Below are positions 11,524 to 50,300 of a stretch of 64,000 nt of DNA, one piece after another. The stretch comes from Selaginella moellendorffii (taxonomy: Eukaryota; Plantae; Lycopodiophyta). The notes under the pieces are model-generated. The model saw nothing but the letters and a program-made list of their open reading frames with translations, was not told where the DNA came from and ran no database searches. The stretch's first letter is position 1. The number at the start of each line of letters is the position of its first letter. The stretch spans positions 1,202,652 through 1,266,651 of the forward strand of contig NW_003314277.1 of the NCBI RefSeq assembly GCF_000143415.4, written 5' to 3'. The position numbers and the translations under genes are program-made.

Positions 11524-14232
11524 TTATCCTATACCAGAAAGAGCTAATCCATTTCCTTCTTCCAGACCACCAACGCACACATTCCAGACGAGTCTATACG
11601 GCCCAGAGTGCTTCGGACACAGATCCATCACCTGATCCCCAACGCTAGCTCCACGCCCGCCATCGCCTTGCGTCTTACAAGAGCTCAGCAGCGAAGTCCA
11701 CGCGATATCATTCGGCTCATACGGCATCGCTTCGAGCAACTCTTGCGCCAGCAAAAGCTGCCCAGTCCGTCCCAAGATATCCACCAGGCACACGTAGTTA
11801 TCCAAGATCGGAGACAAACCATAGTCGCCAACCATGGACACGAAGAACAGCCACGAGTGATACAAGAACCCGCCGTGACTGCAAGCCGAGAGCAAGTTCA
11901 CGACCGTGATCTCTGTCGGCATCACACCACTCTGCACCATCTCCGTGAAGAGCTCCAAGCTTCTCCAGGGACGCCCGGACTGGGCATAGGCGCTGATCAT
12001 GATACTCCACGCCACCACCGTCTTCCTCTCGCCAAGATCATCGAAAACTCTCTCCGCGATCGCAAGACTGCCACACTTCTCGAAGAGATTCAAGAGTCCC
12101 ACCGCGACTTGGGTGTCACTGCTGTATCCACTCTCGATCGCCTTGGCGTGGATCGTTCGGGCCTCCGCGGCGGTGATCCCCCCAGCGCAGGCCTCGAGCG
12201 CTTTGAGATACGTGATCTTGTTTGGTCGCTGGCCGAGGAGATCCATGGCTTTGAAGAGATAGTGAGCTTCGCGACGATGCCCGCTATAGGCATACGCGGA
12301 GATCATTCCAGTCCAGGAGATCACATTCCGCTCCGGCATCTGATCGAAGAGCTCTCGCGCTGGATCGCTGTGGCCGAACTGCGCGTATCCAGTGATCATA
12401 GCGTTCCAGGCCGCGAGGTCGCGGAGTGGAAGAAGATCAAATACAACTCTCGCGGCATCCAAATGCCCGGAGAGAGCATTTGCGGATAGGATCGCAGTCC
12501 AGGCCAGGATGTTCTTCGCGACGATGGCGTGGAACGCCGCGTCCGCCTCTTGGGCGCGCTCGCACCTCCCAAACATCATCACCAGGGACGTCCCGACGTG
12601 AACATCGCCCGCAAAGCACGAATCGACGATGCAAGCGTGCACGACGCGGCCGAATTCGATCGAGGCGAGCGACGAGCACGCGTCCAGGATCGAGAGAAAC
12701 GTCACGCGATTGGGCTGTATGCCATCTAGATCCATGATCCGGAAGCCTGCCAGCGCCTCCTCCTCGCGATCGCACAGCACCAGCGCGAGCATCACCGCGT
12801 TCCTTGACACCACATCGCCCTCCTCCATCGCCGCGAACAATCGCTCGACGCTGGCGACATTGGCGTCGTGGGCGTCGGCGATGAGCACCGTGTTCCAGCC
12901 CACCAGATCCCTCTCGGGCATCCGATCGAGCAGCTTCTCGCCGTGGCGGGGATGCCCATTCTGGGCATACGCCGCGATCATCAGGTTCCACGAGAGGAGG
13001 GATCTCTGGGGCGTCGAATCAAACACCGCTCTCGCCTCCTCCACGCCGCCACACTTCCCATACATCGCGATGAGCCCATTCGCGACGATCAAATTCTCCT
13101 CCATCCTCGCCGTGGCGATCCGGCGATGGATCTTCCGGCCCTCCGCGAGATCGCCCAGCGCGCCGCAGGCCTCGAGCGCGCTCACGAACACGCATTTGTC
13201 CGGCCGGATCCCATCGCCTTCCATCGCATCGAACACTTCCAGCGCCTTCGCGGGATCTCCACTCTGATTGTAAGCCGCGATCATCGTCCCCCACGAAACG
13301 CTGTTGCGATCTTCCATGCCCAAGAACAGCTCCTCGGCGTCGCGCAAATGCCCGTTCTGGGCAAGCGCTGCGACGAGCGCGGTCGCGCACACGACATTCC
13401 TTTCCGGAATCCGGCGGAAGATCTCCACCGCCCAGTCGAGCTGCGCATTCTGCGCGTACGCCGTGATCATGGCTGTCCACGTCACCATGTTGCGCTCTTC
13501 CATCCGATCGAACATCTCTTTCGAGCGCTCCAATCGCCGGCACTTGCCGTACATGCTAGCCAGCGCGGTGGCCACCGCGTAGTGCATCTCTGTACCGCTC
13601 TCCCGGGCCTCCACGTGGACGGCGATGCCGTGATCGATTCTCCGCAAGCTCGAGCACGCATCGATGACGCTCACGAAGGTGATGGTGTCGGCGCGGATCC
13701 CATCCAGATCCATGAGCGCGAAGAGCTGGATCGCGGTGGCGGCGGCGCCGTTCTGCGAGTGAGCGGTGATGAGCGCCGTCCAGGAGATCACGCTCCTGTC
13801 GCTGGGCGGCATCTGATCGAAGGTGATCCTGGCCTGCTGCAAATGCCCGTTCTGGGCAAATGCCGCGACCATGATGTTCCACGAGTAGCAGTTCCTCGCC
13901 GGGATGGAATCGAAGACGCGGCTGGCATCCGCGACGCAGCCGAATCGCCCAAACATCTGGACGAGGAGATTGAGGAGGAAGGAGTCGCGGCATCCGTGCT
14001 TGGAGATGTGGGCGTGGACGCGCCGGCCCTCGGGTACTGCCCGCGCGAGCGTGCATTGGCGGATGAGGACGGCATAGGTATCCGCGTCGGCCGCGCGATC
14101 GAGGGCTTCCAGGCGATCCAATTCCCTTCTCACGGCGTCGCCGGATCCAGATCCCGCGACGCTGCCCCTGTGTAGAAGAGGCTTCTTGTGAGGCCTGCGA
14201 CTGCATTGGTGCAGCGCAAGCGTCCTTCTCAT
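11524..14232 (-). CDS. PLS-class pentatricopeptide repeat protein with E domain, no DYW, intronless
   Basis: 902-aa ORF with repeated 'A..VFD.MPERNVVSW..MI.AYAQNG' motifs; LLSACSHGG; E-domain YVCLVDILGRTGQL...MPYEPNDIAWTSLLSSC. Confidence 0.95.
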   Translation of the reverse strand: MRRTLALHQCSRRPHKKPLLHRGSVAGSGSGDAVRRELDRLEALDRAADADTYAVLIRQCTLARAVPEGRRVHAHISKHGCRDSFLLNLLVQMFGRFGCVADASRVFDSIPARNCYSWNIMVAAFAQNGHLQQARITFDQMPPSDRSVISWTALITAHSQNGAAATAIQLFALMDLDGIRADTITFVSVIDACSSLRRIDHGIAVHVEARESGTEMHYAVATALASMYGKCRRLERSKEMFDRMEERNMVTWTAMITAYAQNAQLDWAVEIFRRIPERNVVCATALVAALAQNGHLRDAEELFLGMEDRNSVSWGTMIAAYNQSGDPAKALEVFDAMEGDGIRPDKCVFVSALEACGALGDLAEGRKIHRRIATARMEENLIVANGLIAMYGKCGGVEEARAVFDSTPQRSLLSWNLMIAAYAQNGHPRHGEKLLDRMPERDLVGWNTVLIADAHDANVASVERLFAAMEEGDVVSRNAVMLALVLCDREEEALAGFRIMDLDGIQPNRVTFLSILDACSSLASIEFGRVVHACIVDSCFAGDVHVGTSLVMMFGRCERAQEADAAFHAIVAKNILAWTAILSANALSGHLDAARVVFDLLPLRDLAAWNAMITGYAQFGHSDPARELFDQMPERNVISWTGMISAYAYSGHRREAHYLFKAMDLLGQRPNKITYLKALEACAGGITAAEARTIHAKAIESGYSSDTQVAVGLLNLFEKCGSLAIAERVFDDLGERKTVVAWSIMISAYAQSGRPWRSLELFTEMVQSGVMPTEITVVNLLSACSHGGFLYHSWLFFVSMVGDYGLSPILDNYVCLVDILGRTGQLLLAQELLEAMPYEPNDIAWTSLLSSCKTQGDGGRGASVGDQVMDLCPKHSGPYRLVWNVCVGGLEEGNGLALSGIG

Positions 14233-25699: not shown

Positions 25700-28447
25700 A
25701 GACCAGCTTACCAGGTCGCGATAACCACGCACGAAAGGATGATCATCCAGTTGCACTGCTGTAGGTCTGTTTGTTCCTCTTTCGAAGCACCATGCAAAAA
25801 GTGATGGCATTCGACCAGGAAGCTGTTAGGGATCTCCTCCGCACCAGATTGGACATTGACTTCCCGTCCAAAGAAGTGTGGAGAGCTGTGATGAAACCAA
25901 CCACTTAAAATGTTAAAAAAAAATTTAAAAAAATGCAAAGCAAACCCTGGAGGGAAAAAAATCTTTGCTGATGCTTGAGTATTTACTCTGTGGCTCCAAA
26001 TTCTTGATCATTTCAAGTACAACACAGCCCAGGCTCCAAACATCCGCTGAAAGACTATCACAATACTGGAGATACAAGTTTCAGCAATGTGGCCACGATT
26101 ATCAATCCACAAACCTCGGCTGGCATCTCAGGAACGCTTCAATCTGGTAAGGAAAATCGTAACAGTTTCAGATTTTACAGAGACACGTACCGATTGCAAA
26201 CCGATGCCATAATGAGATAGCTTAACAACTTCATCCAAAGTATCCACAAGTATGTTTGCAGCTGTGAGCGCCCTGACAAAGAATCTACAGATCAGTATGA
26301 AGTTTTCACTTGGAATTGATCACTCTTAAAACATGAACCCGTGTCTTGTGCTTCTGCTATGAAGATACTCTAAGCCAGATAAAATCTGACTAGTGTAGTC
26401 TCGAACTGCATCTCTGTTGAATGACACAGTTGCAAGTGTTTTTCCACGTGCGTTCTTCTTATAAATGAACAGCATGCAATTCACAATCCATGGATAGTTT
26501 ATTGCTTCAACGACTGCCTCAGATGCATAGTACTGCACGATGTGGGGGTGCCGCAGAGCGCTGAGTTCTGCAACTCGCTGAAAGTCATAAGTCAGATGTG
26601 CATGAGCTACTAAGCTAGAGAGTAGACTACTTCCCACCTTAGCCAGGTTCTTAAACTGTGCAGGGAGCACATCGGAACTGTAAAGCACAATTCTGCAGCA
26701 GGGTCGGCCTCTGTAAAGGCCTTGAACATATATATGTTTGGAGTGGAGATCAGAGTGTGGAATAATGTCTGTCTGTCTCCACTCAGCAGTGTCAGCACCT
26801 GTCCTGCCAGCATGAGCTCAAATTCATAGCCTGTTACGTTTATACACACCTGCGTGCTGTCTTCGAAAGGTTTGCAAGATATTGATTATCTGATAAGTGT
26901 ATTGTCGAACTTCATCTTCGTTGAATGACAGACTTGCAAGTGTTATTCCAGGTACGTCCTCCTCATAAATGAACAGCATGCAATTCAGAATCCATGGATA
27001 GTTTATTGCTTCAACGCCTGCCTGAGATGCATAGTACTGCACGATGTGGGGGTGCCACAGAGCACTGAGTTCTACAACAACCTGAAAGCCAAAAGTCAGA
27101 TGTGTATCAACTACTAAGCTAGAGAGTAGACTTCTTTACCACCTTAGGCAGGTTCTCAAACTGTGCAGGGAGCACATTGGAACTGTAAAGCTCAATTCTG
27201 CAGCAGAGTCAGCCTCTGTAAATGCCTTCAACACTGGAGTGTGAAAAAATGTCTCGTCTCCACTCAGCACCTGTCCTGTCAGCGTGAGCTCAAATTCATA
27301 GCCTGTTACGTTTATACATGCTGCTGTTTTCGAAAGGCTTGCAAGATATCGATTATCACATCCATGTCTGGAAAGTCATAGTTACTCTGGTTCATGATTT
27401 CTTTCAGGGCCTTTGCATTTTATTCATCATAATTAGTTTTAGCCAGCTTCACAAACAGTTTTAATGATTCACAAAGTAAGTTTTTCAATTTTGTTGCATT
27501 CCCCCTTTCTTGTCGCCACCAATAAACCATGAATCGACAATATTATGCAGCCTCAAGTCAACCTTAACTTCCCAAAAACCATGTCTATGCAAGTGTAGAA
27601 CAGCTTCTACAACTTGGTAAGTGACTTCCAGAAGTTGAGACATGGTGAGTTTGACGGTCGCCACTCTCCATAAATATGCGACACTCACGATTCTTGGTAA
27701 GTATGTAATGCTTCCTGGTATCGTGGCAGTGGCACCATCCAAAAATCTTCACAATAGAGGAACTTGGACCTAGGAAAGGACCATTCGTCACCTCGAGATC
27801 CTCATCATAATCGAGCTCCACAAGTTAGCAGCCTGACCAAGCCAACCAAACCACTCCTCAGACCACTTCTCAGTAGGAGCAGTAGGCCAATCTTCCATGT
27901 TTATTCTGGGACAGTAGCCACTTTGTCTTTGGGATAAGTACTCGACAAGCTCCTCGGCATTCTTCACCAATTCGGTACAATCTTCGTTTGCCAAATTGTG
28001 GAGGTCATAATACGGATCCTGCTCCTGCTCAATATCGGACAGCCGCTCAAGAACATGGCCCGCCCACATACCCTCTTTTAGAACCCTTGACCTACGAATT
28101 GCGTCCGAGTTGATTATGTCCACACATTCCTGAAGCTCTGACAGAAGTTCCACAACTTCCCATCTCCTGTCATACCTGGATGCAGCGATCCACTCCCAGT
28201 GCTCTTTATGACTGCATTGCCCGAGAAATTCCTTCACTCTATCCAATACATGGGCAAGGCGCTCCAAGGCCGCAGATAGGGGTGGGATTGAGAAAGGTGG
28301 CCCGGCATTGATGATCTGCCCCCACAAGCGGCAGTACAGGGCATGTTGATTGCATACCAGAAACAGTAGCCTGCATAGACGAGGATACGCTTTGGCATTT
28401 GGCGCAAGCTCAGAAATCGCATCGATCGACCTCAGTATGTCCTCCAT
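25700..28447 (-). pseudogene. Decayed 4-helix-bundle (MLKL/MCAfunc-like) + degenerate kinase + intron-containing MAPKKK-like pseudokinase
   Basis: ORF 27788-28447 is similar to the helical domain of 28873-30579 (C.LL.LVC, EHWEW.A...YDR..E); frameshifted kinase remnants at 27480-27820; LRHPHIVQYY, YTSQILSGLEYLHS, ALTAANILV, KLSHYG, ADVWSLGCVVLEM; 3' limit approximate. Confidence 0.7.
26400..27358. repeat. ~480-bp tandem duplication of kinase N-lobe exons
   Basis: 26400-26890 matches 26900-27358 (both encode QYYAS.A.VEAINYPWI.NCMLFIY). Confidence 0.85.
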
Positions 28448-28872
28448 AGCTCCCTGAAACCCAGGCTTTGACTTGGGTGAAGGGGGGAGGGGGTGTGCAG
28501 ATATATGTAGCGCTGTTCATCTTCTTGAGCTCCACCCAAGTTGGCAAAAAATGAGCCAAGTCAACAGGGAGTCAATAAAGAATAGTTTGTTGTAATATTT
28601 ATTATCGCTTAAAGAATATTTTGAATTTTTATTGCGTACTGTTATATAATATCAGGTATTATTATAACTATAACAAATCATATCTCAAATCCATAGAACT
28701 AGTCTTCTTCTCTCTCGGCTTTTTTGTTTCTCTCTCTTCTTTTGATCATCAAGCTTCGACATGAAAGCTGACTTTGTCCTCCATAGAGTTTGGCTTTGGG
28801 GCTGGGTTGGGTGAAGGGGGGAGGGGGTGTGCAGGTATACGTAGCGGCGTTCATCTTCTTGAGCTTCACCCA
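28438..28872. repeat. ~100-bp direct repeat (28438-28539 and 28774-28872) that includes the start codon of the minus-strand gene
   Basis: tgtcctccatag...ggctttg...ttgggtgaaggggggagggggtgtgcag...gttcatcttcttgagct.cacccaa occurs twice. Confidence 0.85.
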
Positions 28873-30579
28873 ATGGCAAGGAAGGTGCATATCAAGGTTT
28901 GCAGCGCTCGTGGCTTGATGCCGAGAGATGGATGCGGATCAGCAAGTCCTTACTGTATGGTGAGTTTCGACGGGCAGCAGGTCAAGACCCAAGTACGACA
29001 CAGGACTCTGAATCCGGAATGGAACGAGACCCTGGATCTCAACGTTGAGGGGGATGCATTGCAGCGAAGCCATGTTCGTGTCTCTGTTCTGAATTACACG
29101 AATCGGCGTCCTCTGGGGAAAATCAAGATAGAGGGTAGTGAGGTTCCGCATTGTTCATCTGAGCCTTCCGATTCCGAGCAGCGAAAGTACCGGCTGAAGA
29201 CCGGCTTGAGCTGCGTCGCGATCAAGGAGAGAGGTTCGTTGACACTCAAGCTATGGTGGAGCGGCCCTGTTGACCATCATGAACATCCTTCACGTCGGGT
29301 CCGAATCCCTGCACCACAAATTGACAGCGTCAAGCATGAAGCTGAACTCGATAACATCATGATGAACATAAATCAGACTGCAAGTGCTGTCGAAGTCCAT
29401 AAGGAACAGTGCTTGCTGTTGTGTTTGGTTTGCAAGGACAGCGTTGAAATGGTGAGAGGGTATGCAGGCAGTAGTGAGCTCTTCTTAAGGAGGCTAAGAC
29501 AATTCATCAGGAAAGCAAACGGGGTGATTCGAGAGTGTTCCAAGCTTGAGGAGCATTGGGAGTGGCTTGCGGTTGTGAAATACGACAGGGAATTGGAAAT
29601 CGAGGAGATCGTGGAGGAACTTCATTTCATGTGTGGGCTCATTGACGAAAGTCCTATTCAGGCTCACCTGCCAGAAATCCATGCAGTAGCCCAGCTCGAC
29701 AAAGCTGCACTGGAAAAACAGGCACTAGATGGGAAATTTAAAAGTCACTATGCTAAATACATACTAGAGAGAGTAAATTCTTCAGAGCTGCCCGAGTTGA
29801 ACTCGGAGAATGTGAATGTTCATTTCGGGGAAATGCTCGGTAGAGGAAGCTATGGTGTTGTTCGTAAAGGAACGTGGCATCAAAGGCTAGTTGCAGTCAA
29901 GGAGTTCAGGGAGTCTAATCTTTCATCACGAGAACTGCGCGCAGTATCACGTATACAGGCTGCTCCTCACATTGTTCAAACCATCGGCTACTACAAGGTT
30001 GACGAAAGCTGTACCCACTTGGTCATGGAGGTAATGAGGATGGATCTAAAAGAGTATGCCAGCAAGAACAAAGGGCTCACGCACTTGCAACTGGTCGAGA
30101 TGCTGCTCCAGATTACCAAGGGCCTCAACTTCCTGCATGGGAAAAACATTGTGCACAGAGACCTCAAGCCAGAAAACGTTCTAATCGATTTCACTGATGA
30201 GGACGAAGAGCAGCTTGTCCTGAAACTCGCCGATTTCGGTACTGCATACATCAACTTCAATACTGAACTTTCACATACAGCTCCAATAGGGACGCGTATT
30301 TTCATGGCCCCTGAGCTACAGAGTGAAGAAATTAAAAGAAATGGTGAGACCGTGTACTCAAGATCGGTGGACCTTTACAGCCTTGGAATGACATTCTCCC
30401 AGTTGGTCTTGTCGCAGCCTGCCATTGGGACGCCAACAGCAGAGCTGGAGGCTCTGATATGTCGATGTTCTTCTGAAGAGCCATCCGAAAGACCGGTTGT
30501 TGATGAGGTTCTGAAGTCATTACGTAACATTTTGCGCAACATTCTGTGCTGCAGTCTTGTCGGCGGAAGTGCTATATGA
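28873..30579 (+). CDS. Intronless C2 domain - MLKL/MCAfunc-like four-helix bundle - Ser/Thr protein kinase
   Basis: C2: VCSARGLMPRDGCGSASPYC...TLNPEWNETL; helical domain with VHKEQCLLL...LRRLRQFIRKANGVIREC; kinase GRGSYG, VAVK, HRDLKPEN, DFG, GTRIFMAPE, DLYSLG, ERP. Confidence 0.88.
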   Translation: MARKVHIKVCSARGLMPRDGCGSASPYCMVSFDGQQVKTQVRHRTLNPEWNETLDLNVEGDALQRSHVRVSVLNYTNRRPLGKIKIEGSEVPHCSSEPSDSEQRKYRLKTGLSCVAIKERGSLTLKLWWSGPVDHHEHPSRRVRIPAPQIDSVKHEAELDNIMMNINQTASAVEVHKEQCLLLCLVCKDSVEMVRGYAGSSELFLRRLRQFIRKANGVIRECSKLEEHWEWLAVVKYDRELEIEEIVEELHFMCGLIDESPIQAHLPEIHAVAQLDKAALEKQALDGKFKSHYAKYILERVNSSELPELNSENVNVHFGEMLGRGSYGVVRKGTWHQRLVAVKEFRESNLSSRELRAVSRIQAAPHIVQTIGYYKVDESCTHLVMEVMRMDLKEYASKNKGLTHLQLVEMLLQITKGLNFLHGKNIVHRDLKPENVLIDFTDEDEEQLVLKLADFGTAYINFNTELSHTAPIGTRIFMAPELQSEEIKRNGETVYSRSVDLYSLGMTFSQLVLSQPAIGTPTAELEALICRCSSEEPSERPVVDEVLKSLRNILRNILCCSLVGGSAI

Positions 30580-30759
30580 AACCTGCCATGCACAAAGCAT
30601 ATATGTGCATTTTTAAGTATGGTAGCAACCATGCAGATCTATGGATATTTTTTTTTTCAATTGCTATAATAGCAATTTAAATATGATTGTATTTATAATA
30701 TTTTTGTTATTGGATATGTGGCATGACACATTAGACTGCAATGCACCCACAGCTTCCAA

Positions 30760-30980
30760 AAGTCGAGAAGTCATCTGACTCTCATGAAGAAGAAATCTGA
30801 ATGCCGAAGTTACCACACTTTGGAAAGTAACTCGTGCATTCGTCAACCCAAATGGCATGACATAAAATATATAACAGCCCCACTCTGTAACAAATGTTGT
30901 CTTTGCTTGATCCTCAGGAGCCACCTAGATCTGGTTATATCCACTATAACCATCCATATCAATTCTGTGATATCATTGCA
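30760..30980 (-). mobile_element. Ty3/gypsy reverse transcriptase relic
   Basis: MAPEDQAKTTFVTEWGCYIFYVMPFGLTNARVTFQ. Confidence 0.75.
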
Positions 30981-33060: not shown

Positions 33061-33303
33061 ATATTCTTAACTAATTCTTTTGAAAAGGAAGAGATGCCAA
33101 GGTGTATGAATGAGAGGCTGTGCCGACAATAGAGAGGCGAGAGAGCAGCAGAACAAAAATCATTGGCAGGCTTGTCGCTAATATTGCAAAGTGGGACTTC
33201 AGCAGTCTCCAGGTGGTGGTAAATCCACCCAGTTGTGCCCAAACCTAATTTCTCAATAAACCTACAGAATTTGAGTAGTAAACGAGATCCTGGATTTCGA
33301 CTT

Positions 33304-34814
33304 TGAGGGGGATGCATTGCAGCGACGCCATGTTGGTGTCTCTGTTCTGAATTACACGAATGGGGGTTCTCTGGGGAAAATCAAGATAGAGGGTAGTGAC
33401 GTTCCACATTGTTCAGCTCGGCCCGAGCAGCGAGAGTACCCGCTGAAGATCAGCTTGGGCTGCATCGCGATCATGGAGAGAGGTTCGTTGACACTCAAGC
33501 TATGGTGGAGCGGCCCTGTTGACCATCATGAACATCCTTCACCTCAGGTCCGAATCCCTGCACCACAAATTGACAGCGTCAAGCATGAAGCTGAACTCGA
33601 TAACATCATGATGAACATAAATCAGACTGCAAGTGCTGTCGAAGTTCATAAGGAACAGTGCTTGCTGTTGTGTTTGGTTTGCAAGGACAGCGTTGAAATG
33701 GTGAGAGGGTATGCAGGCAGTAGTGAGCTCTTCTTAAGGAGGCTAAGACAATTCATCAGGAAAGCAAACGGGGTGATTCGAGAGTGTTCCGTGCTTGAGG
33801 AGCATTGGGAGTGGCTTGCGGTTGTGAAATACAACAGGGAATTGGAAGTCAAGGAGATTGTGGAGGAACTTCATTTCATGTGCAGCAAAAGTTTTATTCA
33901 GGCTTTCTTGCCAGATATGCAAGCAGCAGCCCAGCTCGACAAAGCTGCACTGGAAAAACAGGCATGAGATGGGAAATTTAGAAGTCACTATGCTAAATAC
34001 ATACTAGAGAGAGTAAATTCTTCAGAGCTGCCCGAGTTGAACTCGGAGGACGTGAGTGTTCATTTCGGGGAATTGCTCCATAGAGGAAGCTATGGTGTTG
34101 TTCGTAAAGGAACGTGGCATCAAAGGCTAGTTGCAGTCAAGGAGTTCAAGGAGTCTCAAGATCTTCCATCACAAGAACTGCCCGCAGTATCAAGTATACA
34201 AGCTGCTCCTCACATTGTTCAAACCATCGGCTACTACAAGGTTGACGAAAGCTGTACCCACTTGGTCATGGAGGTAATGAGGATGAATCTAAAAGAGTAT
34301 GCCAGCAAGAACAAAGAGCTCACGCTCTTGCAACTGGTCGAGATCCTGCTCCAGATTACCAAGGGCCTCGACTTCCTGCATGGGAAAAACATTGTGCATA
34401 GAGACCTCAAGCCAGAAAACGTTCTAATCGATTTCACTGATGAGGACGAAGAGCAGCTTGTCCTGAAACTCACTGATTTCGGTACTGCATACATCAACTT
34501 CAATATTGAACAATCACATACAGCTCCAGTAGGGACGAGGTTTTTCAGGCCCCCGAGCTGCTGAGTGAAGAAAGTAGAAGAAATGGTGAGAGCATGTACT
34601 CAAGATTGGTGGACCTTTACAGCCTTGGATCTCCCAGTTGGTCTTGTCGCAGCCTGCCATCAGGATGCCAACAGTAGAGCTGGAGGCTCTGATATGTTGA
34701 TGTTCTTCGGAAGAGCCATCCGAAAGACCAGTTGTTGATGAGGTTCTGAAGTCATTACGTAACATTCTGTGCAACATTCTGCGCTGCAGTCTTGTTGGCG
34801 GAAGTGCTATATGA
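33304..34814 (+). pseudogene. 5'-truncated duplicate of the C2-4HB-kinase gene
   Basis: Near-identical to 29045-30579; lacks the C2 N-half; nonsense TGA at 33965-33967; 1-bp deletion before APE (~34546); 3' UTR also duplicated to ~34934. Confidence 0.92.
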
Positions 34815-36728
34815 AACCTGCCATACACAAAGCATACATGGGCATTTAAAAGTATGGTGGCAACCATGCAGATCTATGGATTTATTTATTTATTTCTATT
34901 ATAAATTGCTATAATAGCAATTTAAATATGATTGTGTGAGTGCATGGAATATGGAAAGGGAATACAGAAATGTGCATATCAATTAGCCCAAAAACCCTGG
35001 CTTATATACAGGAGCAAGTGGTCCGGATTGAAACCAATCCGACGGCTACCAAAATCCCACTACGCTAATATTAGTATACGGCATCGTAGCCGTACACTTG
35101 GCCCTCACATCATCCTCTCCTCTCGGAATAATGGAAGACCATCAGGGTTCTCTTGTAGATGGGCCGGGATCTGGAGGAACATTAGGAGGAGGCATCGGTG
35201 GATCTGTAGGTGGCATTAGCTGCTCTTGATCCCTTTGTATGAAGCATTTTAGCCGCTGCACATGCACAATCTCTGGAGGATTGGTCTGCTGAACGTCATG
35301 CTAAACCTCATAAACTTGTGGTCCAACTTGCCGCAACACCCGATACGGTCCTTTTCACTGCGCAAGAAGTCCCTTAGATAAACCATGTACCGTAAGATGA
35401 GGAAAACGGACTAACACCAAATCATCCACTTTGTACTCCGCAGGTGGACGATGATGACAGTTGTAGCGTCGTTGTTGTCCTACTTGTACGTGGCATAAAT
35501 GTTCGGCAGACTCTGCTCGGACTAGTGGAAGAATGCTCGTCAAATACTGATCCCACGACCTAGAATCGGCAGCTCGCGGCAATCGCGAAGGTAAACCTAG
35601 CTCTGTTGGTAATATTAGATCATGACCATATAAAAGTTTATATGGTGAAGCACCAATAGAACTTTGCACCCCCGTGACATATGCATACCGAAGAGACGGC
35701 AAATAACCATCCCAATCCGAATGCTGAAAGTTCACATACTTCGCAATCATCCCTTTGAATGTCCGAACGAGCCGCTCCACCAGACCGTCTGATTGTGGAT
35801 GATAAGCACTCGTGAAAGTGTGGCGTATCCCCAACCGAGACGTCAAAACATGAAATGCCTCAGCCATAAATGCAGGACCATTATCCGAAAGAATCCGCTC
35901 TGGACAAGAATGCTGGAACACCACTCGATTTAGGAGGAAGTAGCCAACAGCAGTTGCAGAGGCGCTAGCAAGAGCACCAACTTCCACCCAACGAGTCAAG
36001 TAGTCAGAAGCAATAATAACATACTCATTGCCAGTAGTCGACCGTGGAAAAGGTCCCATAAGATTAAACGCCACCAACTCAAACGGACGGGAAACCGCAA
36101 TTGACTCCAACCGTCCTTCCGTAGCACGAGGGAGATTATTATGAGCTTGGCACCAAACGCAGCTACGCACATACCAGATAACATCATGTCGCATCTTCGG
36201 CCAGTAAAAAGACCTGCGCAACTTCTTGGTTACATGACGGTGTCCCATATGCCCACCTAGAACAGGAGAATCATGGTAGGCATGGAGAAACCGCGGAATA
36301 AAGACAAAAGGCACCACCAGCCGTAAATGATCCTCAGGATCCGTCCCCACAAAATAAAGAAGGCCATCTTCAAGGCGATATTGAGAATGTAAATGCCGGA
36401 AAGGCAAGTCATCAGCAAGTGATGTAGGATTCTCAAACCCATTTCGAAGCCTTTGAATCCATGGCTCAATCTTTTGAGCCTCGCGAACATCATCAAGAGA
36501 AGGTAGATCCTGCTTTGCGCCTTGTGGACACTGAACGTCAAGGACAGCAACCGCCGACGGCACAGAATCCTCGTCTAGAAAATCTACAGATGCTAGAACA
36601 ACAGGCTCGTCAGAAACATGAGAAGTGAGTGAAGAAGGAAGAGGAGCTCGAGAAAGGGCATCAGCATCAGCCATAGAACTCCCTGGGCGATGAACAACAT
36701 CAAAATCATATATCTGAAGCTTCAAAGC

Positions 36729-37877: not shown

Positions 37878-38785
37878 AAAGCCCACCGAGCAGTACGACT
37901 AACCAGGTTCTTCCGCTTCAATAATGAAGTAACAGTAGTATGGTCACCTTCAAGTAACATCTGAGAACCATGTAGATATGCATGAAGTTTCTCGAAACCC
38001 CAAACTGCTGCTAAACACTCCTTCTCCGTCGTGGAGTAGTTCATCTCTGCTGGTTGTAATGTACGGCTTATATACGCAATAGGATGGTGTTGACCAGGCA
38101 CACTCGAGCTCTCTTGCATACACACACCTCCAAGACCAATGTCAGAAGCATCCATGCGCAAAATAAAAGGTCGAGTGTAGTCAGGATATGCCAAAACCGG
38201 AGGAGTCGTCAATAGCATTTTGAGATCCCCGAACGCCTGCTCACAATCCGAAGACCAGATGAAAGATGATGTTGATGACTTCAACAATGCTCACAATTGT
38301 GCAGTGCGATCAGAAAGATGATCCACAAAACGACCGAGATACTACACCTTGCCCAAGAAGCGCTGCACATCATTCACACATTTCGGAGTAGGGAACTTTA
38401 GAACAGCCACAAGTTTGTCAGGATCAACTTGCAAACCCTCACGAGAAATACGGTACCCAAGATAAGTTGTATCCTTGGACCCAAACGCGCACTTTGACCT
38501 CTTCAACTTTAAACCAATATCGCGTAGCCGATCCAACACTTTACAAACATCACGAACGTGCTCCTCCCACGTCCCCTCCGAGTGAATCAAGACATCATCA
38601 ATGAAGTCGGCAGTCACCTCTGGCATATCACAAAGAACCTCGTCCATCATCCGTTGGAAAGTTGCTGGAGCGTTGTTCAAACCAAACGGCATCACCAAGA
38701 ACTTGTACAAACCAAACGGTGTACGAAAAGCAGTCTTAGGAATATCTTTTGCGGCCATTGGTACTTGCCAGTACCCAGAAGCAAG

Positions 38786-40581
38786 TGTGAGACACAAAAT
38801 CCCTAGGCCCCAAAGTGGAGACGGAAGGGCGCCATGTGGTAGTGGCCGAAGCGAGAGCCAAACGAGCGTAACACGTTTGGACCAAAAGCTCCAACTTGAA
38901 AAGTCAAGAGCGGGAGTGGAACTCCCAACGAAGTGCTCGAGGAACGTGCACGAAGCGAGAAAAAAGCGAGGCTCCAAAAAGGGACCCAAAAGGACCAACA
39001 CATGACACGTGGAAGTGTCCGAGATGGACTCGAGTTGGAGTCCGAAGTGGAGTCCGAGATGGACCCGAGTTGGAGTCCGAAGTGGAGTCCGAGATGGACC
39101 CGAGTTGGAGTCCGAAGTGGAGTCCGAGGTGGACCCGAGTTGGAGTCCGAAGTGGAGTCCGAGATGGACCGAGACGGAGTCCGATATGGAGTCTGAGATG
39201 GACCCAAGAAGGAGTCCGAGATGGAGTCCGAGATGGACCCGAGATGGAGTCCGAGAAGGAGTCCGAGATGGACCGAGACGGAGTCCGATATGGAGTCCGA
39301 GATAGACCCGAGATGGGGTCCAAGATGGAGTCCGAGATGGACCGAGACGGAGTCCGATATGGAGTCCGAGATGGACCCGAGATGGGGTCCGAGATGGAGT
39401 CCGAGATGGACCCGAGATGGAGTCCAAGATGGAGTCCGAGATGGAACCGAGACCGAGACCGAGACCGAGGCCGAGACCGAGACCGAGACCGAGACCGAGT
39501 CCGAAACCAGGACCGAGTCCAAGTCCGAGTCCGAGTTCGAGCCCGAGTCCGAGTCCGAATACTAATACAGGCAGTTGGGTGAAAGCCCAAAGCGATCGTC
39601 CCCCAGGGGGGGGGGGGCTGCGGGGGGTTCCAAAAGTATAGTAGGGAGAGTGTGGGGGTTGGAGCCCAGTGGAGCCAGTTGGGCCAGGAAGGGCCAGTTT
39701 GGTCCAGGAAGGCCATACCCAGTGTTGGGTGATGAGCTGGCCACTGGGAAGTCCAAGACTAGAGTGAATACGGACCGACAAGCGGGGTAGCTTGGTAAAG
39801 TGTTCAAGAGCCGGCTCTAGTTCCCCCGGGAGATCGACTGGCCGATGCTCCCAGTCCAAGTGTGGGTGGCACTACCTACTTGGATACCTGGTGTGGCTCA
39901 ACGGAACCCGCTCTAAGCCCATGGCTAGAGCACCCAAGGGCAGAAGGCGAGGAGAGTACCCAGGTGGCTCGCGTAAGGCCACGATGTTCCGAAATGTTGT
40001 CCCAAAGGCCCAGACTATGGAAAGGAAGAGGAGCAGTCCTCTGGGGTAGTGACCAAGGACACAGTCGTGTGGTGAGGAAGTCCCAGAGGACCGTGGGACT
40101 TAGTGGTCGGGCCTGTGGGTCTCGATTGAGTGGCAGTGTTGGCAAACATTGCCAGGGGCAGAAAGGGACTTAGTGGGGACTGACAGAGGGATGTTGGGGA
40201 AGGCTATTCCCCTTGTCGGTGGGCATCCTAAGGATGCTAAGGAGTGGATCTGAGATGACCACTCACGGATGGTTTGCATAGTCTTGGAGAGCCAAGACTG
40301 TGATGCAAGTGGTATTGGACTACCAGTGTGGCAAAGGTGATTGGGCATGGCCTTAGCGTAACGGGCTGCTATGTCGGTGGTACCTTTGAGTGTCGGTCAT
40401 GGGATCGAATACGTGGAGCACTTGGACCAAGTGCAAATGTTGAGTGGCATGGATGCCATTCTCGGGGCTAGCAAGTCCCAAGTCCTGGATTGGACTTATG
40501 GAGGTTGTGAATGAAACTCCTCCAAGTGGTTAGAGGTGTGGTTAAGTGACTAAAGTAGAATGGAAAATTTAGTCACTTACA
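38786..40581 (+). repeat. 5' LTR
   Basis: Highly similar to 44722-46477; followed by PBS. Confidence 0.92.
39016..39560. repeat. LTR-internal minisatellite (ggagtccgagat/ggacccgagat units, then (ccgaga)n); also at 44952-45285
   Basis: Direct reading of the tandem units. Confidence 0.92.
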
Positions 40582-47392: not shown

Positions 47393-50300
47393 TCTAGATC
47401 TAGCTTTTTTCCATTCCCTTTCTTTTGTTATTCCTTTTTAGGATTTTGGTTTAGATCTAGCTTTTTTACATTGTCTAGATCTTCTATTTCCTTCTCACTT
47501 TTTTGTCGTTTCTCTTCTTTCGCTCTTTCTTCGTTTGTCTTTATGGTAGATCAGCAATCTCCTCCTTTGACTCTGGAGCAGCAGTTGGTACAATTGCTTG
47601 ATGCTATGCGTTTGCAATTGAACAACCAAACTCAGTTGATGGCGGCATTCACGGCACGTGGTACAACCCCTCCTACTCTTAGTGCTAATCCTCGCATTCG
47701 GCCGGAGTTCTTTCGTGGGAATCCTAGGGATGATGTGTACCATTGGTTCGATCACTTCACAGTGATTGCCACATATCATTCTTGGGATGATGTTCGACGT
47801 TTGCGTGAGTTTCCCACATGTCTCCAAGGGACAGCATTGCAATGGTACAATGGCCTGAGCACAGCTACTCGTGAGGACTGGAGTGTTCTCCTGGACGTCT
47901 TCAAACGCGCCTTTGGACATGCCAACGACTATGATGATGCCTTCCAACAATTGCATCATATTTGCCAAGGGCCATCTGAGTCGGTGATGCAATTTGGCGT
48001 TCGTTTCCGAAGTCTTTTACTTCGTGCGGAGCCAAATATATCGGAGCGGATCAAGCTAAGAATGTTGTGGCCAGCACTTCATCAAAATTTTGTCGGACTT
48101 GTGCATGCACTTGCTCCTGCCACCCTTGACGATACTCTTTGTTTAGCATAGCGTTATGAGACGTCACCTCTTCCACTTCTCGCTACACGTCTTTCAGCTC
48201 CACTTCCTTTGGGTGATGGTCCTGTTCCAATGGAGGTTGATGCTACTGCTGCTCGCGTCCAAGGACAAGGTCAAGGACGTGGTTGTGGTTGTGATGTTCG
48301 CTGCTAGGCGTGTGATGAAGTTGGTCATACTTATCAGCATTGTCGATAGTTTCCGAATTGGCGACCTCCATTTCCTGGGTGGCGACCTTAGCATCAGCAA
48401 TGTCCTGTTGGTGCTACTGCAGTTGATGGTTTGGACACCGAGTTACATTCGGGAAACGAGGAGTCACGCAAGTAACGGAGGAACCTTGCGCAAATAAGTT
48501 AGTGACCCCTTTATCTTTCTTTCGGGAGTATCATCAAAGGGTTCACTCAGCACCGGTTCATCAAGTGTTTACTTTCCAAGCTCGTTTTTATAACAAGAGG
48601 TCTTCTATTATTCTTTCCATGCTGGTTGATACAGGTTTGAGTTTATCTTCTATTGCTTGACCTGTTGCCACATGTTGCTGTTTACACTTGCGTCGTGCGG
48701 CAGAACCAGTTTTCATTCTTTATGGCAACGGCCGTACACATGCATGTGCACGGGATGAGGTGGACTTGGTTGTGCATGTAGGTGATCTCGAGCTTGAGCT
48801 GCAAGCATTGTGGGTGGTGCCGAGTCAAGCTTTTGACCTCATTCTTGGTATGGATTGGTTGCAACGCAATTATGCTAAGTGTGATTTTGAGGCTTCTCCC
48901 CCTTGTCTCATACTTCCTTATGTTTTATCCATTCCTCTCACTTTTGTACCTCTTTGTCCTTCTACTTCTACCTCTGCTTCTATTACTTTTGTTCCCCCAC
49001 TATTTCCTCCTATATTTCCATCTTGTTCTGCTTTTCCCTTTTCTGATCCCTCTGACGATCTTTGTGTTGTAGCGGTGGACCGGATCATAAAGGAGTATTC
49101 TGATCTCTTTGAATTTGACCTCTCGTCTGGGGCCAAGATTGCCACACGTCATCCGATTCCAACCGGGGATGCTTGTCCAATCAAGGTTCCCATTCATCGT
49201 CGGTCACCCAAGGAGATCTGGATTTTACGTGCAAATGTTAAGGAGATGTTGGAGAAGGGTGTTATTCGGAAGTCGCGGAGTCCTTGGGCATGTGAACCTC
49301 ATCTTGTGACGAAGCCTAATGGGAGTATTCGTTTATGCATCGACTATTATCCGTTAAACAAAGTGACGATCCCAGATGTATACCCTCTTCCTCACACTAC
49401 TGATCTCTTCGATCGTCTAGCGCGAAGTCGTTGGTTCACCAAGTTAGATCTTGCTTCTGGGTACTGGCAAATACCGATGGCCGCAGAAGATATTCCTAAG
49501 ACTACTTTTCGTACACCATTTGGTTTGTACAAGTTCTTGGTGATGCCATTTGGTTTGAACAATGCTCCAGCATTTTTCCAGCGGATGATGGACGAGGTTC
49601 TTTGCGATATACCGGAGGTGACTACTGACTTCATTGATGATGTCTTGACCACTCGAAGGGGACGTTGAAAGAGCACGCTCGTGATGTTTGTAAAGTGTTG
49701 GATCGGCTATGCGACATTGGTTTAAAGCTGAAGCGGTCGAAATGTGTGTTTGGGTCCAAGGATACAACTTATCTTGGGTACCGTATTTCTCGTGAGGGTG
49801 TGCAAGTTGATCCTGATAAACTTGTGGCGATTCTAAAGTTCCCTACTCCGAAGTGTGTGAATGATGTGCAATGCTTCTTGGGCAAGGTGCAGTATCTCGG
49901 TCGTTTTGTGGATCATCTTTTTGGTCGCACTGCACCGTTGCGAGCGTTGTTGAAGTCATCAACATCATCTTTCATATGGTCTCCGGATTGTGAGCGGGCG
50001 TTCGGGGATCTCAAAGAGCTGTTGATGACTCCTCCAATTTTGGCATATCCTGACTACATTTGACCTTTTATCTTGCGTGTGGATGTTTCTAACATATGTC
50101 TTGGAGGTGTGTTGATGCAAGAGAGCTCGAGTATGCTTGGTCAGCACCATCTCATTGCGTATATAAGCCGTATATTACAACTAGTGGAAATGAACTACTC
50201 CACGACAGAGAAGAAGTGTTTAGCAGCAGTTTAGGGTTTCGAGAAACTTCATGCATATCTACATGGTTCTCGGACGTTACTTGAATGTGATCATGCTGCT

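What the first reader, a model, noticed from the sequence alone, without database searches (positions are those of the whole stretch)
28873..30579. C2 - MLKL-like four-helix bundle - active kinase fusion
Seen: an intronless 568-aa ORF with an MCTP-like C2 domain, a ~110-aa helical domain, and a kinase retaining VAVK, HRDLKPEN, DFG and APE but with a shortened subdomain X. The helical domain (INQTASAVEVHKEQCLLL...LRRLRQFIRKANGVIREC) resembles MLKL N-terminal/MCAfunc domains. Known: MLKLs are 4HB-pseudokinases that permeabilise membranes, and C2 domains target lipids, often via Ca2+. Inference: a self-contained membrane-targeted, self-phosphorylating cell-death or channel protein, an architecture I do not know to be described.
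Basis: partly seen in the sequence, partly recalled or inferred. Interest (0 to 1): 0.8.

Follow-up and report, generated by a model that had tools for sequence, protein, structure and literature searches.

The report
Clubmoss C2–MLKL-like–kinase fusion gene
A Selaginella gene joins a lipid-binding C2 domain to an MLKL-type "executioner" helical bundle and a kinase that keeps all catalytic residues; bundle-plus-active-kinase proteins are already known in plant immunity, so only the added C2 domain and a conserved pseudokinase partner gene next door are new.

Summary
Window 28873-30579 (+) is an intact 568-aa ORF of Selaginella moellendorffii. It is transcribed and no splice joint was seen. It encodes C2 (Pfam 1e-16), a helical middle domain, and a kinase (Pfam 1e-40) with every catalytic motif and a C-lobe about 24 residues short.

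The middle domain has no Pfam match. An AlphaFold model (pLDDT 79) finds MLKL structures as the top seven re-aligned PDB matches: AtMLKL2 Z 12.5 over 157 of 167 residues, then human and mouse MLKL and AtMLKL3. The "MLKL-like bundle" guess is therefore supported, brace included.

The novelty claim is only partly right. Four-helix-bundle plus active kinase is a described plant class (Pm13/MLKL-K, R3AK, hundreds in grasses). The new points are:
- the N-terminal C2, which keeps only 1 of 5 Ca2+-ligand aspartates;
- sequence-level restriction of the bundle to S. moellendorffii in an exhaustive search;
- fast evolution (dN/dS about 1 between paralogues);
- a head-to-head 4HB-pseudokinase gene, paired the same way at a second locus.

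A decayed tandem copy lies at 33281-34811. The cell-death or membrane function is inferred, not shown. Verdict: new variant of a known kind, of moderate interest.

The parts
28873..30579 (+). Complete CDS of the C2-4HB-brace-kinase protein (568 aa plus stop). It is identical to P0001; RNA contigs span at least 28748-30587.
28873..29262 (+). C2 domain (residues 1 to about 130). Of the five canonical Ca2+-ligand Asp positions only D19 is kept (S25, N74, T76, about R79 at the others).
   Evidence: Pfam C2 E 1e-16; alignments to dysferlin and synaptotagmin-7 C2 domains
29326..29637 (+). MLKL-like four-helix bundle (residues 152-255), with a short extra helix at 229-235 between helices 3 and 4.
   Evidence: AF2 pLDDT 79; VIA Z 12.5 AtMLKL2, 10.2 human MLKL NTD, 9.7 mouse MLKL, 9.2 AtMLKL3; Foldseek top hits AtMLKL3, hMLKL, AtMLKL2; Atlas TM 0.72 to an MLKL_N cluster
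29653..29778 (+). Two brace helices (residues 261-285 and 291-302) linking the bundle to the kinase.
   Evidence: aligned with the brace of AtMLKL2/3, chain residues up to 228-233; brace motifs shared with P0043 and P0024
29821..30549 (+). Protein kinase domain (residues 317-559). All catalytic motifs are present. The alphaG region is about 24 residues shorter than usual.
   Evidence: tree places it with plant 4HB-kinases inside a TKL-like clade
26061..28447 (-). Divergently transcribed neighbour. It has a homologous 4HB plus brace (ORF 27788-28447, 219 aa), then degenerate pseudokinase remnants with frame breaks relative to paralogue P0121. It is transcribed at low level.
   Evidence: paralogous pair P0121/P0002 head-to-head 136 bp apart
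33281..34811 (+). Tandem copy 2 (annotated as the 390-aa P0003). It is 5'-truncated at codon 51, has an in-frame stop in the brace and a frameshift in the activation segment: a likely pseudogene.
28473..28873 (.). Shared intergenic and leader region with a 67-nt direct repeat (28473-28539 and 28807-28873, 93% identical). No RNA coverage over 28378-28731.

Best explanation
This is an expressed gene of Selaginella moellendorffii, with no intron seen. It encodes a plant MLKL-type kinase fusion protein with an extra N-terminal C2 domain. Shown here: the domain order is C2, then MLKL-fold four-helix bundle, two-helix brace, and a TKL-derived kinase with a complete catalytic set. The gene is transcribed. 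The bundle sequence family was found only in S. moellendorffii and evolves fast. The gene sits head-to-head with a 4HB-brace-pseudokinase gene, and the same pairing occurs at a paralogous locus. Inferred mechanism: the C2 has lost most Ca2+ ligands, so it probably binds lipid without Ca2+ and keeps or brings the protein to a membrane. The kinase and brace hold the bundle in an auto-inhibited state, as in MLKL and Pm13. On activation by phosphorylation, either its own or exchanged with the neighbouring pseudokinase partner, the protein oligomerises through the brace. It then triggers an immune or cell-death output, through the bundle acting on the membrane, through kinase signalling, or both. 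Its most likely biological role is innate immunity, as for AtMLKLs, Pm13 and R3AK.
For: Domains and motifs. MLKL fold including the brace: AF2 pLDDT 79.4; VIA re-alignment top 7 all MLKLs, with AtMLKL2 Z 12.5, rmsd 2.9, 157/167 aligned; Foldseek-independent search of 48,161 representatives has MLKLs at ranks 1, 2 and 4; Foldseek top 4 are MLKLs; the ESM Atlas model gives TM 0.72 to an MLKL_N cluster and 0.61 to MCAfunc. Link to plant 4HB-kinases: a colinear BLASTP alignment of residues 171-558 with P0043, whose N-terminus hits RPW8 at 4e-4, MLKL_N at 0.009 and DUF1221 at 0.011; conserved bundle and brace motifs in A5; the kinase tree groups the Selaginella kinases with P0043 and P0024, support 94/83. 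Expression with strand. Conserved head-to-head pairing. Selection: dN/dS 0.98 overall and 0.69 in the kinase at dS 0.08; only 0.7% of simulated neutral descendants stay open; both paralogues are intact. This pattern is typical of fast-evolving immune genes. Functional precedent: AtMLKL (bioRxiv 10.1101/681015), Pm13 (PMC10951266, PMC11297308), R3AK (10.64898/2026.08.07.743466).
Against: There are no functional data. Pfam MLKL_N, DUF1221, HeLo and RPW8 do not reach significance on the Selaginella domain itself (best RPW8, E 0.05). Structural Z scores of 9-12.5 are within the range that helical bundles can reach by common arrangement (tool notes), and Foldseek E-values are 0.4-1. The AF2 alignment had only 8 sequences. 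A dN/dS near 1, a dead tandem copy and a frame-broken neighbour also fit a decaying family. The shortened alphaG region might impair substrate docking or activity. RNA depth is low. The kinase tree uses a biased sample and the Selaginella branch is very long (1.57). No NLR-like gene was detected nearby by a single-query tblastn.
Confidence: 0.6

Rival explanations
1. It is a signalling or sensor kinase fusion protein. The bundle (and perhaps the C2) acts as a regulatory or decoy domain and makes no pore. The output goes through kinase activity, as proposed for Pm13/MLKL-K, where brace plus active kinase kills and the 4HB alone does not.
For: Complete catalytic set. Pm13 precedent (PMC11297308). 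The highest dN/dS lies in the C2 (1.53) and 4HB (1.03) and the lowest in the kinase (0.69), as expected if the N-terminal domains are under diversifying pressure as sensing surfaces.
Against: In AtMLKLs, animal MLKL and R3AK the 4HB is the executioner (10.1101/681015; 10.64898/2026.08.07.743466). A C2 domain fused to a bundle suggests action at a membrane. Nothing here separates the two readings.
Confidence: 0.25
2. It is a young, lineage-specific duplicate family drifting towards loss. The ORF is still open and weakly transcribed but has no maintained function.
For: dN/dS 0.98 between paralogues. Copy 2 is truncated and broken. The neighbour is frame-broken relative to P0121. P0122 is a 196-aa fragment. 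RNA depth is low. No relatives were found outside S. moellendorffii.
Against: Two full-length ORFs of 566 and 568 codons survive at dS 0.08, while only 0.7% of neutral simulations stay open, counting substitutions only. Every catalytic residue is kept in both. Kinase dN/dS is 0.69. The head-to-head pairing is kept at both loci.
Confidence: 0.1
3. The middle domain is a generic up-down helical bundle unrelated to MLKL, HeLo or RPW8. The resemblance is only a common arrangement of helices.
For: No significant Pfam hit. Foldseek E-values are 0.4 or more. Designed bundles and THATCH or talin rods score Z 8-9.6 in the same list.
Against: MLKLs rank first in four searches on two independent models. 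The match covers 157-158 of 167 residues, including the brace. The bundle-brace-kinase order is the same as in MLKL. There is sequence continuity with P0043, which gives sub-threshold hits to RPW8, MLKL_N and DUF1221.
Confidence: 0.05

Closest known systems
Plant MLKL_NTD-kinase fusion proteins with catalytically intact kinases (wheat/Aegilops Pm13 = MLKL-K; wheat R3AK helper MLKL)
   Same: Four-helix bundle, helical brace, and a kinase that keeps the catalytic residues. A fast-evolving, lineage-restricted gene family. An immune cell-death role is documented for those proteins.
   Different: An N-terminal C2 domain precedes the bundle. The bundle is too diverged for Pfam and had no sequence relatives outside S. 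moellendorffii in an exhaustive search. The kinase has an HRDLKPEN-type catalytic loop and a shortened alphaG region. The partner next door is a 4HB-pseudokinase, not an NLR. It is a lycophyte gene, not a grass gene.
Arabidopsis AtMLKL1-3 (DUF1221/HeLo-brace-pseudokinase; PDB 6LBA, 6KA4)
   Same: Best structural match of bundle plus brace: Z 12.5 and 9.2, 157-158 residues aligned. Same domain order.
   Different: AtMLKLs are pseudokinases with a C-terminal Ser-rich extension and no C2. There is no significant DUF1221 sequence match here. The neighbour gene (P0121 type) is closer to this architecture than the target is.
Animal MLKL (PDB 4BTF, 6UX8, 6ZVO), activated by RIPK3
   Same: 4HB plus two-helix brace plus kinase-fold domain. 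Z 9.6-10.2, rmsd about 3 A over 127-133 residues.
   Different: MLKL is catalytically dead and is phosphorylated by a separate kinase. Here the kinase is predicted active and is fused to its own bundle and a C2. Sequence identity is 12-14%.
Wheat Pm4 (kinase fused to multiple C2 domains and a transmembrane PRT_C region); protein kinase C (C2 plus kinase)
   Same: A C2 lipid-binding module and a Ser/Thr kinase in one polypeptide. Pm4 is an immune receptor.
   Different: Those proteins have no four-helix bundle and a different domain order. PKC C2 domains of the conventional type bind Ca2+; this C2 lacks 4 of 5 ligands.

Membership tests
MLKL family in the strict sense (animal MLKL, plant AtMLKL) | Four-helix-bundle (HeLo/4HB) executioner domain fold | tested here: met
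   AF2 model pLDDT 79. MLKL chains rank top in VIA wide, pdb_via and Foldseek. Atlas TM 0.72.
MLKL family in the strict sense (animal MLKL, plant AtMLKL) | Brace helices linking the bundle to a C-terminal kinase-fold domain | tested here: met
   Helices 261-285 and 291-302 align with the AtMLKL2/3 brace. The kinase follows at residue 317.
MLKL family in the strict sense (animal MLKL, plant AtMLKL) | Kinase-like domain is a pseudokinase lacking catalytic residues | tested here: not met
   K343, E354, HRD 428-430, N435, DFG 454-456 and APE 479-481 are all present.
MLKL family in the strict sense (animal MLKL, plant AtMLKL) | Sequence membership in Pfam MLKL_N (PF22215) or DUF1221 (PF06760) | tested here: not met
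   Neither family is listed at E up to 10 for the Selaginella domains. The best clan-related hit is RPW8 at E 0.05. Only the bridging protein P0043 gives 0.009-0.011.
MLKL family in the strict sense (animal MLKL, plant AtMLKL) | Bundle is N-terminal | tested here: not met
   A C2 domain (residues 1 to about 130) precedes it.
MLKL family in the strict sense (animal MLKL, plant AtMLKL) | Membrane permeabilisation, Ca2+ influx or cell death on activation | not testable with these tools
   Needs expression and liposome assays.
Plant 4HB(MLKL_NTD)-kinase fusion proteins (Pm13/R3AK type) | 4HB plus brace fused to a kinase that keeps catalytic residues | tested here: met
   class definition from PMC10951266 and 10.64898/2026.08.07.743466
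Plant 4HB(MLKL_NTD)-kinase fusion proteins (Pm13/R3AK type) | Common descent of the 4HB-brace-kinase module with other plant members | tested here: inconclusive
   Colinear 23% alignment with P0043. The A3 profile hits P0043 with E 6e-5 in a 125-sequence set. The kinase tree gives 94/83 support but uses a long branch and a biased sample. The literature reports repeated independent fusions.
Plant 4HB(MLKL_NTD)-kinase fusion proteins (Pm13/R3AK type) | Genetic pairing with an NLR (R3AK type only) | tested here: not met
   No NB-ARC similarity in the window or in L001 by tblastn with one NB-ARC query, which is a weak test. The conserved partner is a 4HB-pseudokinase.
C2 domain (PF00168) | Sequence match above Pfam threshold | tested here: met
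   61.4 bits against a cutoff of 22, E 1e-16.
C2 domain (PF00168), Ca2+-dependent subtype | Five conserved Asp ligands in loops 1 and 3 | tested here: not met
   Only D19 is kept. S25 replaces the DPY aspartate. N74, T76 and an Arg replace the loop-3 aspartates, in alignments to dysferlin and synaptotagmin-7.
Eukaryotic protein kinase (PF00069) | Pfam match plus a full catalytic motif set | tested here: met
   E 1e-40; motifs. The alphaG region is shortened; whether it is active is not testable here.

The most novel reading that the evidence does not exclude
The divergent gene pair is a two-component, necroptosis-like module built from two MLKL-type proteins. The membrane-tethered C2-4HB active kinase phosphorylates its neighbour, a 4HB-brace-pseudokinase, much as RIPK3 phosphorylates MLKL. 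The two then co-assemble through their bundles and braces into a membrane-damaging complex. That would be a kinase/pseudokinase executioner pair that arose independently in a lycophyte and is kept together by a shared bidirectional promoter.
Probability: 0.12. Interest if true: 0.8.

Novelty: new variant of a known kind. Interest (0 to 1): 0.5.

Why it matters
Plant MLKL-type proteins have recently emerged as immune executioners and resistance genes, but all studied cases come from seed plants. This lycophyte gene suggests the 4HB-brace-kinase module also occurs outside seed plants, with moss relatives such as Sphagnum P0024. It shows the module can gain a lipid-binding C2 domain. It also shows an active-kinase version and a pseudokinase version kept as a head-to-head pair at two loci. 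If functional, it offers a compact system for three questions: how membrane targeting, kinase activity and the bundle cooperate; whether a plant kinase/pseudokinase pair works like RIPK3 and MLKL; and how often such fusions arise. If it is only a decaying lineage-specific family, it is of minor interest.

Tried and rejected
1. AF2 on the full-length protein with only three near-identical sequences failed (pLDDT 34). I discarded it and re-ran the domain alone with an 8-sequence alignment.
2. A 98-sequence alignment for residues 140-568 (A4) misaligned the neighbour and P0121 and pushed kinase flanks into the bundle. I did not use it for folding. I used it only for kinase columns and spacing.
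3. Word-index searches on the middle region and on the C2 region found only the Selaginella paralogues.
4. The exhaustive profile search gave two extra hits, P0123 and P0124. Both are internally repetitive proteins matched in many short stretches, and I rejected them as spurious.
5. The weak Pfam 'RIN1-like' hit (E 0.02) is below threshold and was given no weight.
6. The dN/dS of copy 1 against copy 2 beyond the bundle is invalid because of the copy-2 frameshift. I ignored it.
7. Allele versus paralogue: the second locus is colinear for only about 6 kb, at 81-91% DNA identity, with rearranged flanks. I treated it as a paralogous segment, but very diverged haplotypes cannot be excluded.
8. A Streptophyta 'C2 + kinase' Atlas cluster (549 aa) could not be retrieved or inspected. 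Whether it shares the bundle is unknown.
9. The search of earlier findings returned nothing bearing on this gene.
Full report
**What is there.** The window is Selaginella moellendorffii DNA. The encoded protein is identical to P0001. Its closest relative (84% identity) is an NCBI S. moellendorffii protein named 'RAF proto-oncogene serine/threonine-protein kinase-like'. The ORF runs from the ATG at 28873 to the stop at 30577-30579 and encodes 568 aa. Pfam finds a C2 domain (residues 4-90, E 1e-16) and a protein kinase domain (317-559, E 1e-40). It finds nothing significant between about 140 and 312.

**Kinase motifs.** In a 98-sequence kinase alignment every near-invariant catalytic column is kept. 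The C-lobe is truly short. The spacing from the subdomain-IX Asp to the subdomain-XI Arg is 40 residues, against a median of 64 in other kinases and 60-61 in the two nearest plant 4HB-kinases.

**Expression.**
- Two stranded raw RNA-seq runs cover 28732-30678 with first mates on the minus strand, as expected for a + strand RNA in common stranded libraries.
- The same runs cover the neighbouring gene region in the opposite orientation.
- There is no coverage in the 28378-28731 spacer.
- No splice joints were seen.
- Small assemblies from two other studies, whose RNA label is only a guess, give colinear contigs over 28748-30587.
- Depth is low, at 1-3x from about 12% of each run. The gene is therefore transcribed, weakly, and no splice joint was seen across the ORF.

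**The middle domain: sequence searches.** Sequence methods say little.
- The word-index search finds only three Selaginella proteins.
- An exhaustive HMMER profile search of 1.84 billion cluster representatives finds only three Selaginella clusters, P0002, P0121 and P0122, plus two spurious repeat proteins.
- The best clan-related Pfam hit on the domain itself is RPW8 at E 0.05.

**The middle domain: structure.** AF2 on the full protein with three near-identical sequences failed (pLDDT 34). I then aligned residues 146-312 with the paralogues, the neighbour gene's homologous domain, and two distant plant proteins, P0043 and P0024. Their N-termini align colinearly with shared motifs. AF2 on this alignment gave pLDDT 79.4 and pTM 0.76. 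The model has an up-down four-helix bundle (152-170, 177-196, 202-221, 240-255), a short helix at 229-235, and two further helices (261-285, 291-302).

Searches with this model gave:
- **VIA-align against 48,161 PDB representatives, without Foldseek:** human MLKL NTD first (6ux8, Z 10.2, rmsd 2.8 Å, 127 residues), mouse MLKL second (4btf, Z 9.7), and AtMLKL3 fourth (6ka4, Z 9.2, 158 of 167 residues, 18% identity).
- **Foldseek:** the top four are AtMLKL3, human MLKL (two chains) and AtMLKL2, but E-values are only 0.4-1.
- **Re-alignment of Foldseek's list:** AtMLKL2 is first (6lba, Z 12.5, rmsd 2.9 Å, 157 residues). The top seven are all MLKLs.
- **ESM Atlas, using its own model of this protein:** nearest an animal MLKL_N cluster (TM 0.72) and then a plant MCAfunc cluster (TM 0.61).

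The tool notes warn that helical bundles can reach Z of about 13 by common arrangement, so no single score is proof. However, MLKLs rank first in four searches on two independent models, with near-complete coverage that includes the brace. The bundle-brace-kinase order is also the same as in MLKL. Together these make the MLKL-type assignment well supported.

**Link to known plant MLKL-type kinases.**
- P0043 is a 567-aa intronless gene on a plant-like metagenome contig, next to an NB-ARC gene. It aligns colinearly with residues 171-558 of the target.
- Its N-terminus gives sub-threshold hits to RPW8 (4e-4), MLKL_N (0.009) and DUF1221 (0.011).
- In a maximum-likelihood tree of 61 kinase domains, the Selaginella kinases group with P0043 and Sphagnum P0024 (support 94/83). 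This group lies inside a starred TKL-like clade that holds Raf/EDR1-like and pyk3-like kinases.
- The Selaginella branch is very long (1.57), and the sample is biased towards hits of the query.
- I read the 4HB-brace-kinase module as probably sharing ancestry with bryophyte 4HB-kinases and having diverged quickly. I do not consider this settled, because the literature reports repeated independent 4HB-kinase fusions (10.64898/2026.08.07.743466).

**The C2 domain.** In alignments to dysferlin and synaptotagmin-7 C2 domains, only the first loop-1 Asp (D19) is retained. The DPY aspartate is Ser25. The loop-3 aspartates are Asn74, Thr76 and an Arg. Classical Ca2+-dependent lipid binding is therefore unlikely. 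Ca2+-independent lipid or protein binding is the more likely role; this is inference from general knowledge of C2 domains.

**Genomic context.**
- **The neighbour.** On the other strand, 426 bp from the start codon, a 219-aa ORF (27788-28447) encodes a homologous bundle plus brace (28% identity, E 2e-9).
- **Its paralogue.** P0121 is 543 aa and continues into degenerate kinase-like sequence. It has EIDLRLHN in place of HRDLKPEN, ADGE in place of DFG, and a second partial kinase with HGA and HYG. It is an MLKL-like 4HB-pseudokinase.
- **The second locus.** On scaffold GL377566.1, P0121 lies head-to-head with P0002, 136 bp apart. The pairing is thus kept at two loci, which are colinear for about 6 kb at 81-91% DNA identity.
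- **State of the window's neighbour.** Here the neighbour has frame breaks relative to P0121 after the brace, and a duplicated kinase-remnant segment. It may encode only bundle plus brace, or it may be decaying. It is transcribed at low level.
- **Copy 2.** A tandem copy of the target at 33281-34811 starts at codon 51. It carries an in-frame stop in the brace and a frameshift in the activation segment. It is a likely pseudogene, although it is annotated as a 390-aa protein (P0003).
- **NLR linkage.** No NB-ARC similarity was found in the window by a single-query tblastn.

**Selection.** Between the target and P0002, dS is 0.08 and dN/dS is 0.98 overall. By domain, dN/dS is 1.53 for the C2, 1.03 for the bundle, 0.92 for the brace and 0.69 for the kinase. 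Only 0.7% of simulated neutral descendants with the same number of substitutions remain free of stop codons. Both paralogues are intact and keep every catalytic residue. This fits a mix of constraint and diversification, as in many immune genes, better than pure decay. With two sequences it cannot be proved.

**Comparison with what is known.**
- AtMLKLs and animal MLKL are bundle-brace-pseudokinases (10.1101/681015).
- Plant proteins with the same bundle fused to a catalytically intact kinase are already described. Pm13/MLKL-K is one; for it, brace plus active kinase triggers death and the bundle alone does not (PMC10951266, PMC11297308).
- R3AK is another; there the bundle executes death (10.64898/2026.08.07.743466).
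- 714 MLKL_NTD-kinase proteins were collected from Poaceae and Arabidopsis alone.
- Kinase-C2 combinations occur in Pm4.
- I found no report of a C2-4HB-kinase or of Selaginella MLKLs in four literature searches. No Atlas cluster combined C2 with an MLKL-type bundle. A Streptophyta 'C2 + kinase' cluster of 549 aa could not be inspected.

**Verdict.** The structural guess is supported. The claim of a wholly undescribed architecture is not. This is a new variant of the plant MLKL-type kinase fusion class, with four distinguishing features:
- an N-terminal C2 domain that lacks most Ca2+ ligands;
- a shortened kinase C-lobe;
- a bundle restricted, at sequence level, to S. moellendorffii;
- a conserved head-to-head 4HB-pseudokinase partner.

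The membrane-targeted immune or cell-death mechanism is an inference from relatives and needs the listed assays.

Noticed in passing
window 28473-28539 and 28807-28873: A 67-nt direct repeat (93% identical, 334 bp apart) lies in the leader regions of both divergent genes. The second copy ends exactly at the target's ATG. The paralogous locus has only 136 bp between the two genes, so the spacer here looks expanded by a local duplication.
   Followed up: partly
window 26061-28447 (-): The neighbour gene is a 4HB-brace protein followed by degenerate pseudokinase sequence. Relative to paralogue P0121 it has a frame break near 27825 and a duplicated kinase-remnant segment (27283-26875 resembles 26889-26182). 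It could yield a bundle-plus-brace-only product.
   Followed up: partly
window 33281-34811 (+): A tandem 5'-truncated copy of the target has an in-frame stop in the brace and a frameshift after GTRFF. It is annotated in NCBI as the 390-aa 'gdt4-like' kinase (P0003).
   Followed up: yes
L003:2860-5946 (ENA metagenome contig ERZ24794452 NODE_1561): An intronless plant-type 4HB-kinase (P0043) lies about 400 bp upstream of a gene with NB-ARC and WHD_ROQ1 domains, on the same strand. This recalls the NLR/MLKL pairs described in Poales. The source organism is unknown.
   Followed up: no
P0024 (Sphagnum magellanicum, 793 aa): Its architecture appears to be 4HB-like N-terminus, then an active-looking kinase, then a C-terminal DUF676/alpha-beta-hydrolase domain. 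This is another unusual extension of a plant 4HB-kinase.
   Followed up: no
AF2 model of residues 146-312 against the ESM Atlas: The best shape match (TM 0.61, 144 residues) is the N-terminal part of plant U-box/ARM E3 ligases (PUB type). This hints that those ligases carry a similar bundle-plus-brace module.
   Followed up: no
window 11527-14232 (-); 30664-30924, 35358-36725 and 38345-39859 (-), 48688-49665 (+); 59870-61801 (-): Other content of the window: a 902-aa PPR protein gene; LTR-retrotransposon integrase and reverse-transcriptase fragments flanking the kinase cluster; and a DUF7869 ORF typical of a DNA transposon.
   Followed up: partly
P0122 (XP_024536120.1, scaffold GL377566.1): A further 196-aa fragment copy (part of the bundle, the brace and half the kinase) is annotated as 'negative regulator of the PHO system-like'. 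The family therefore has at least four target-type loci in this genome, two of them fragmentary.
   Followed up: partly
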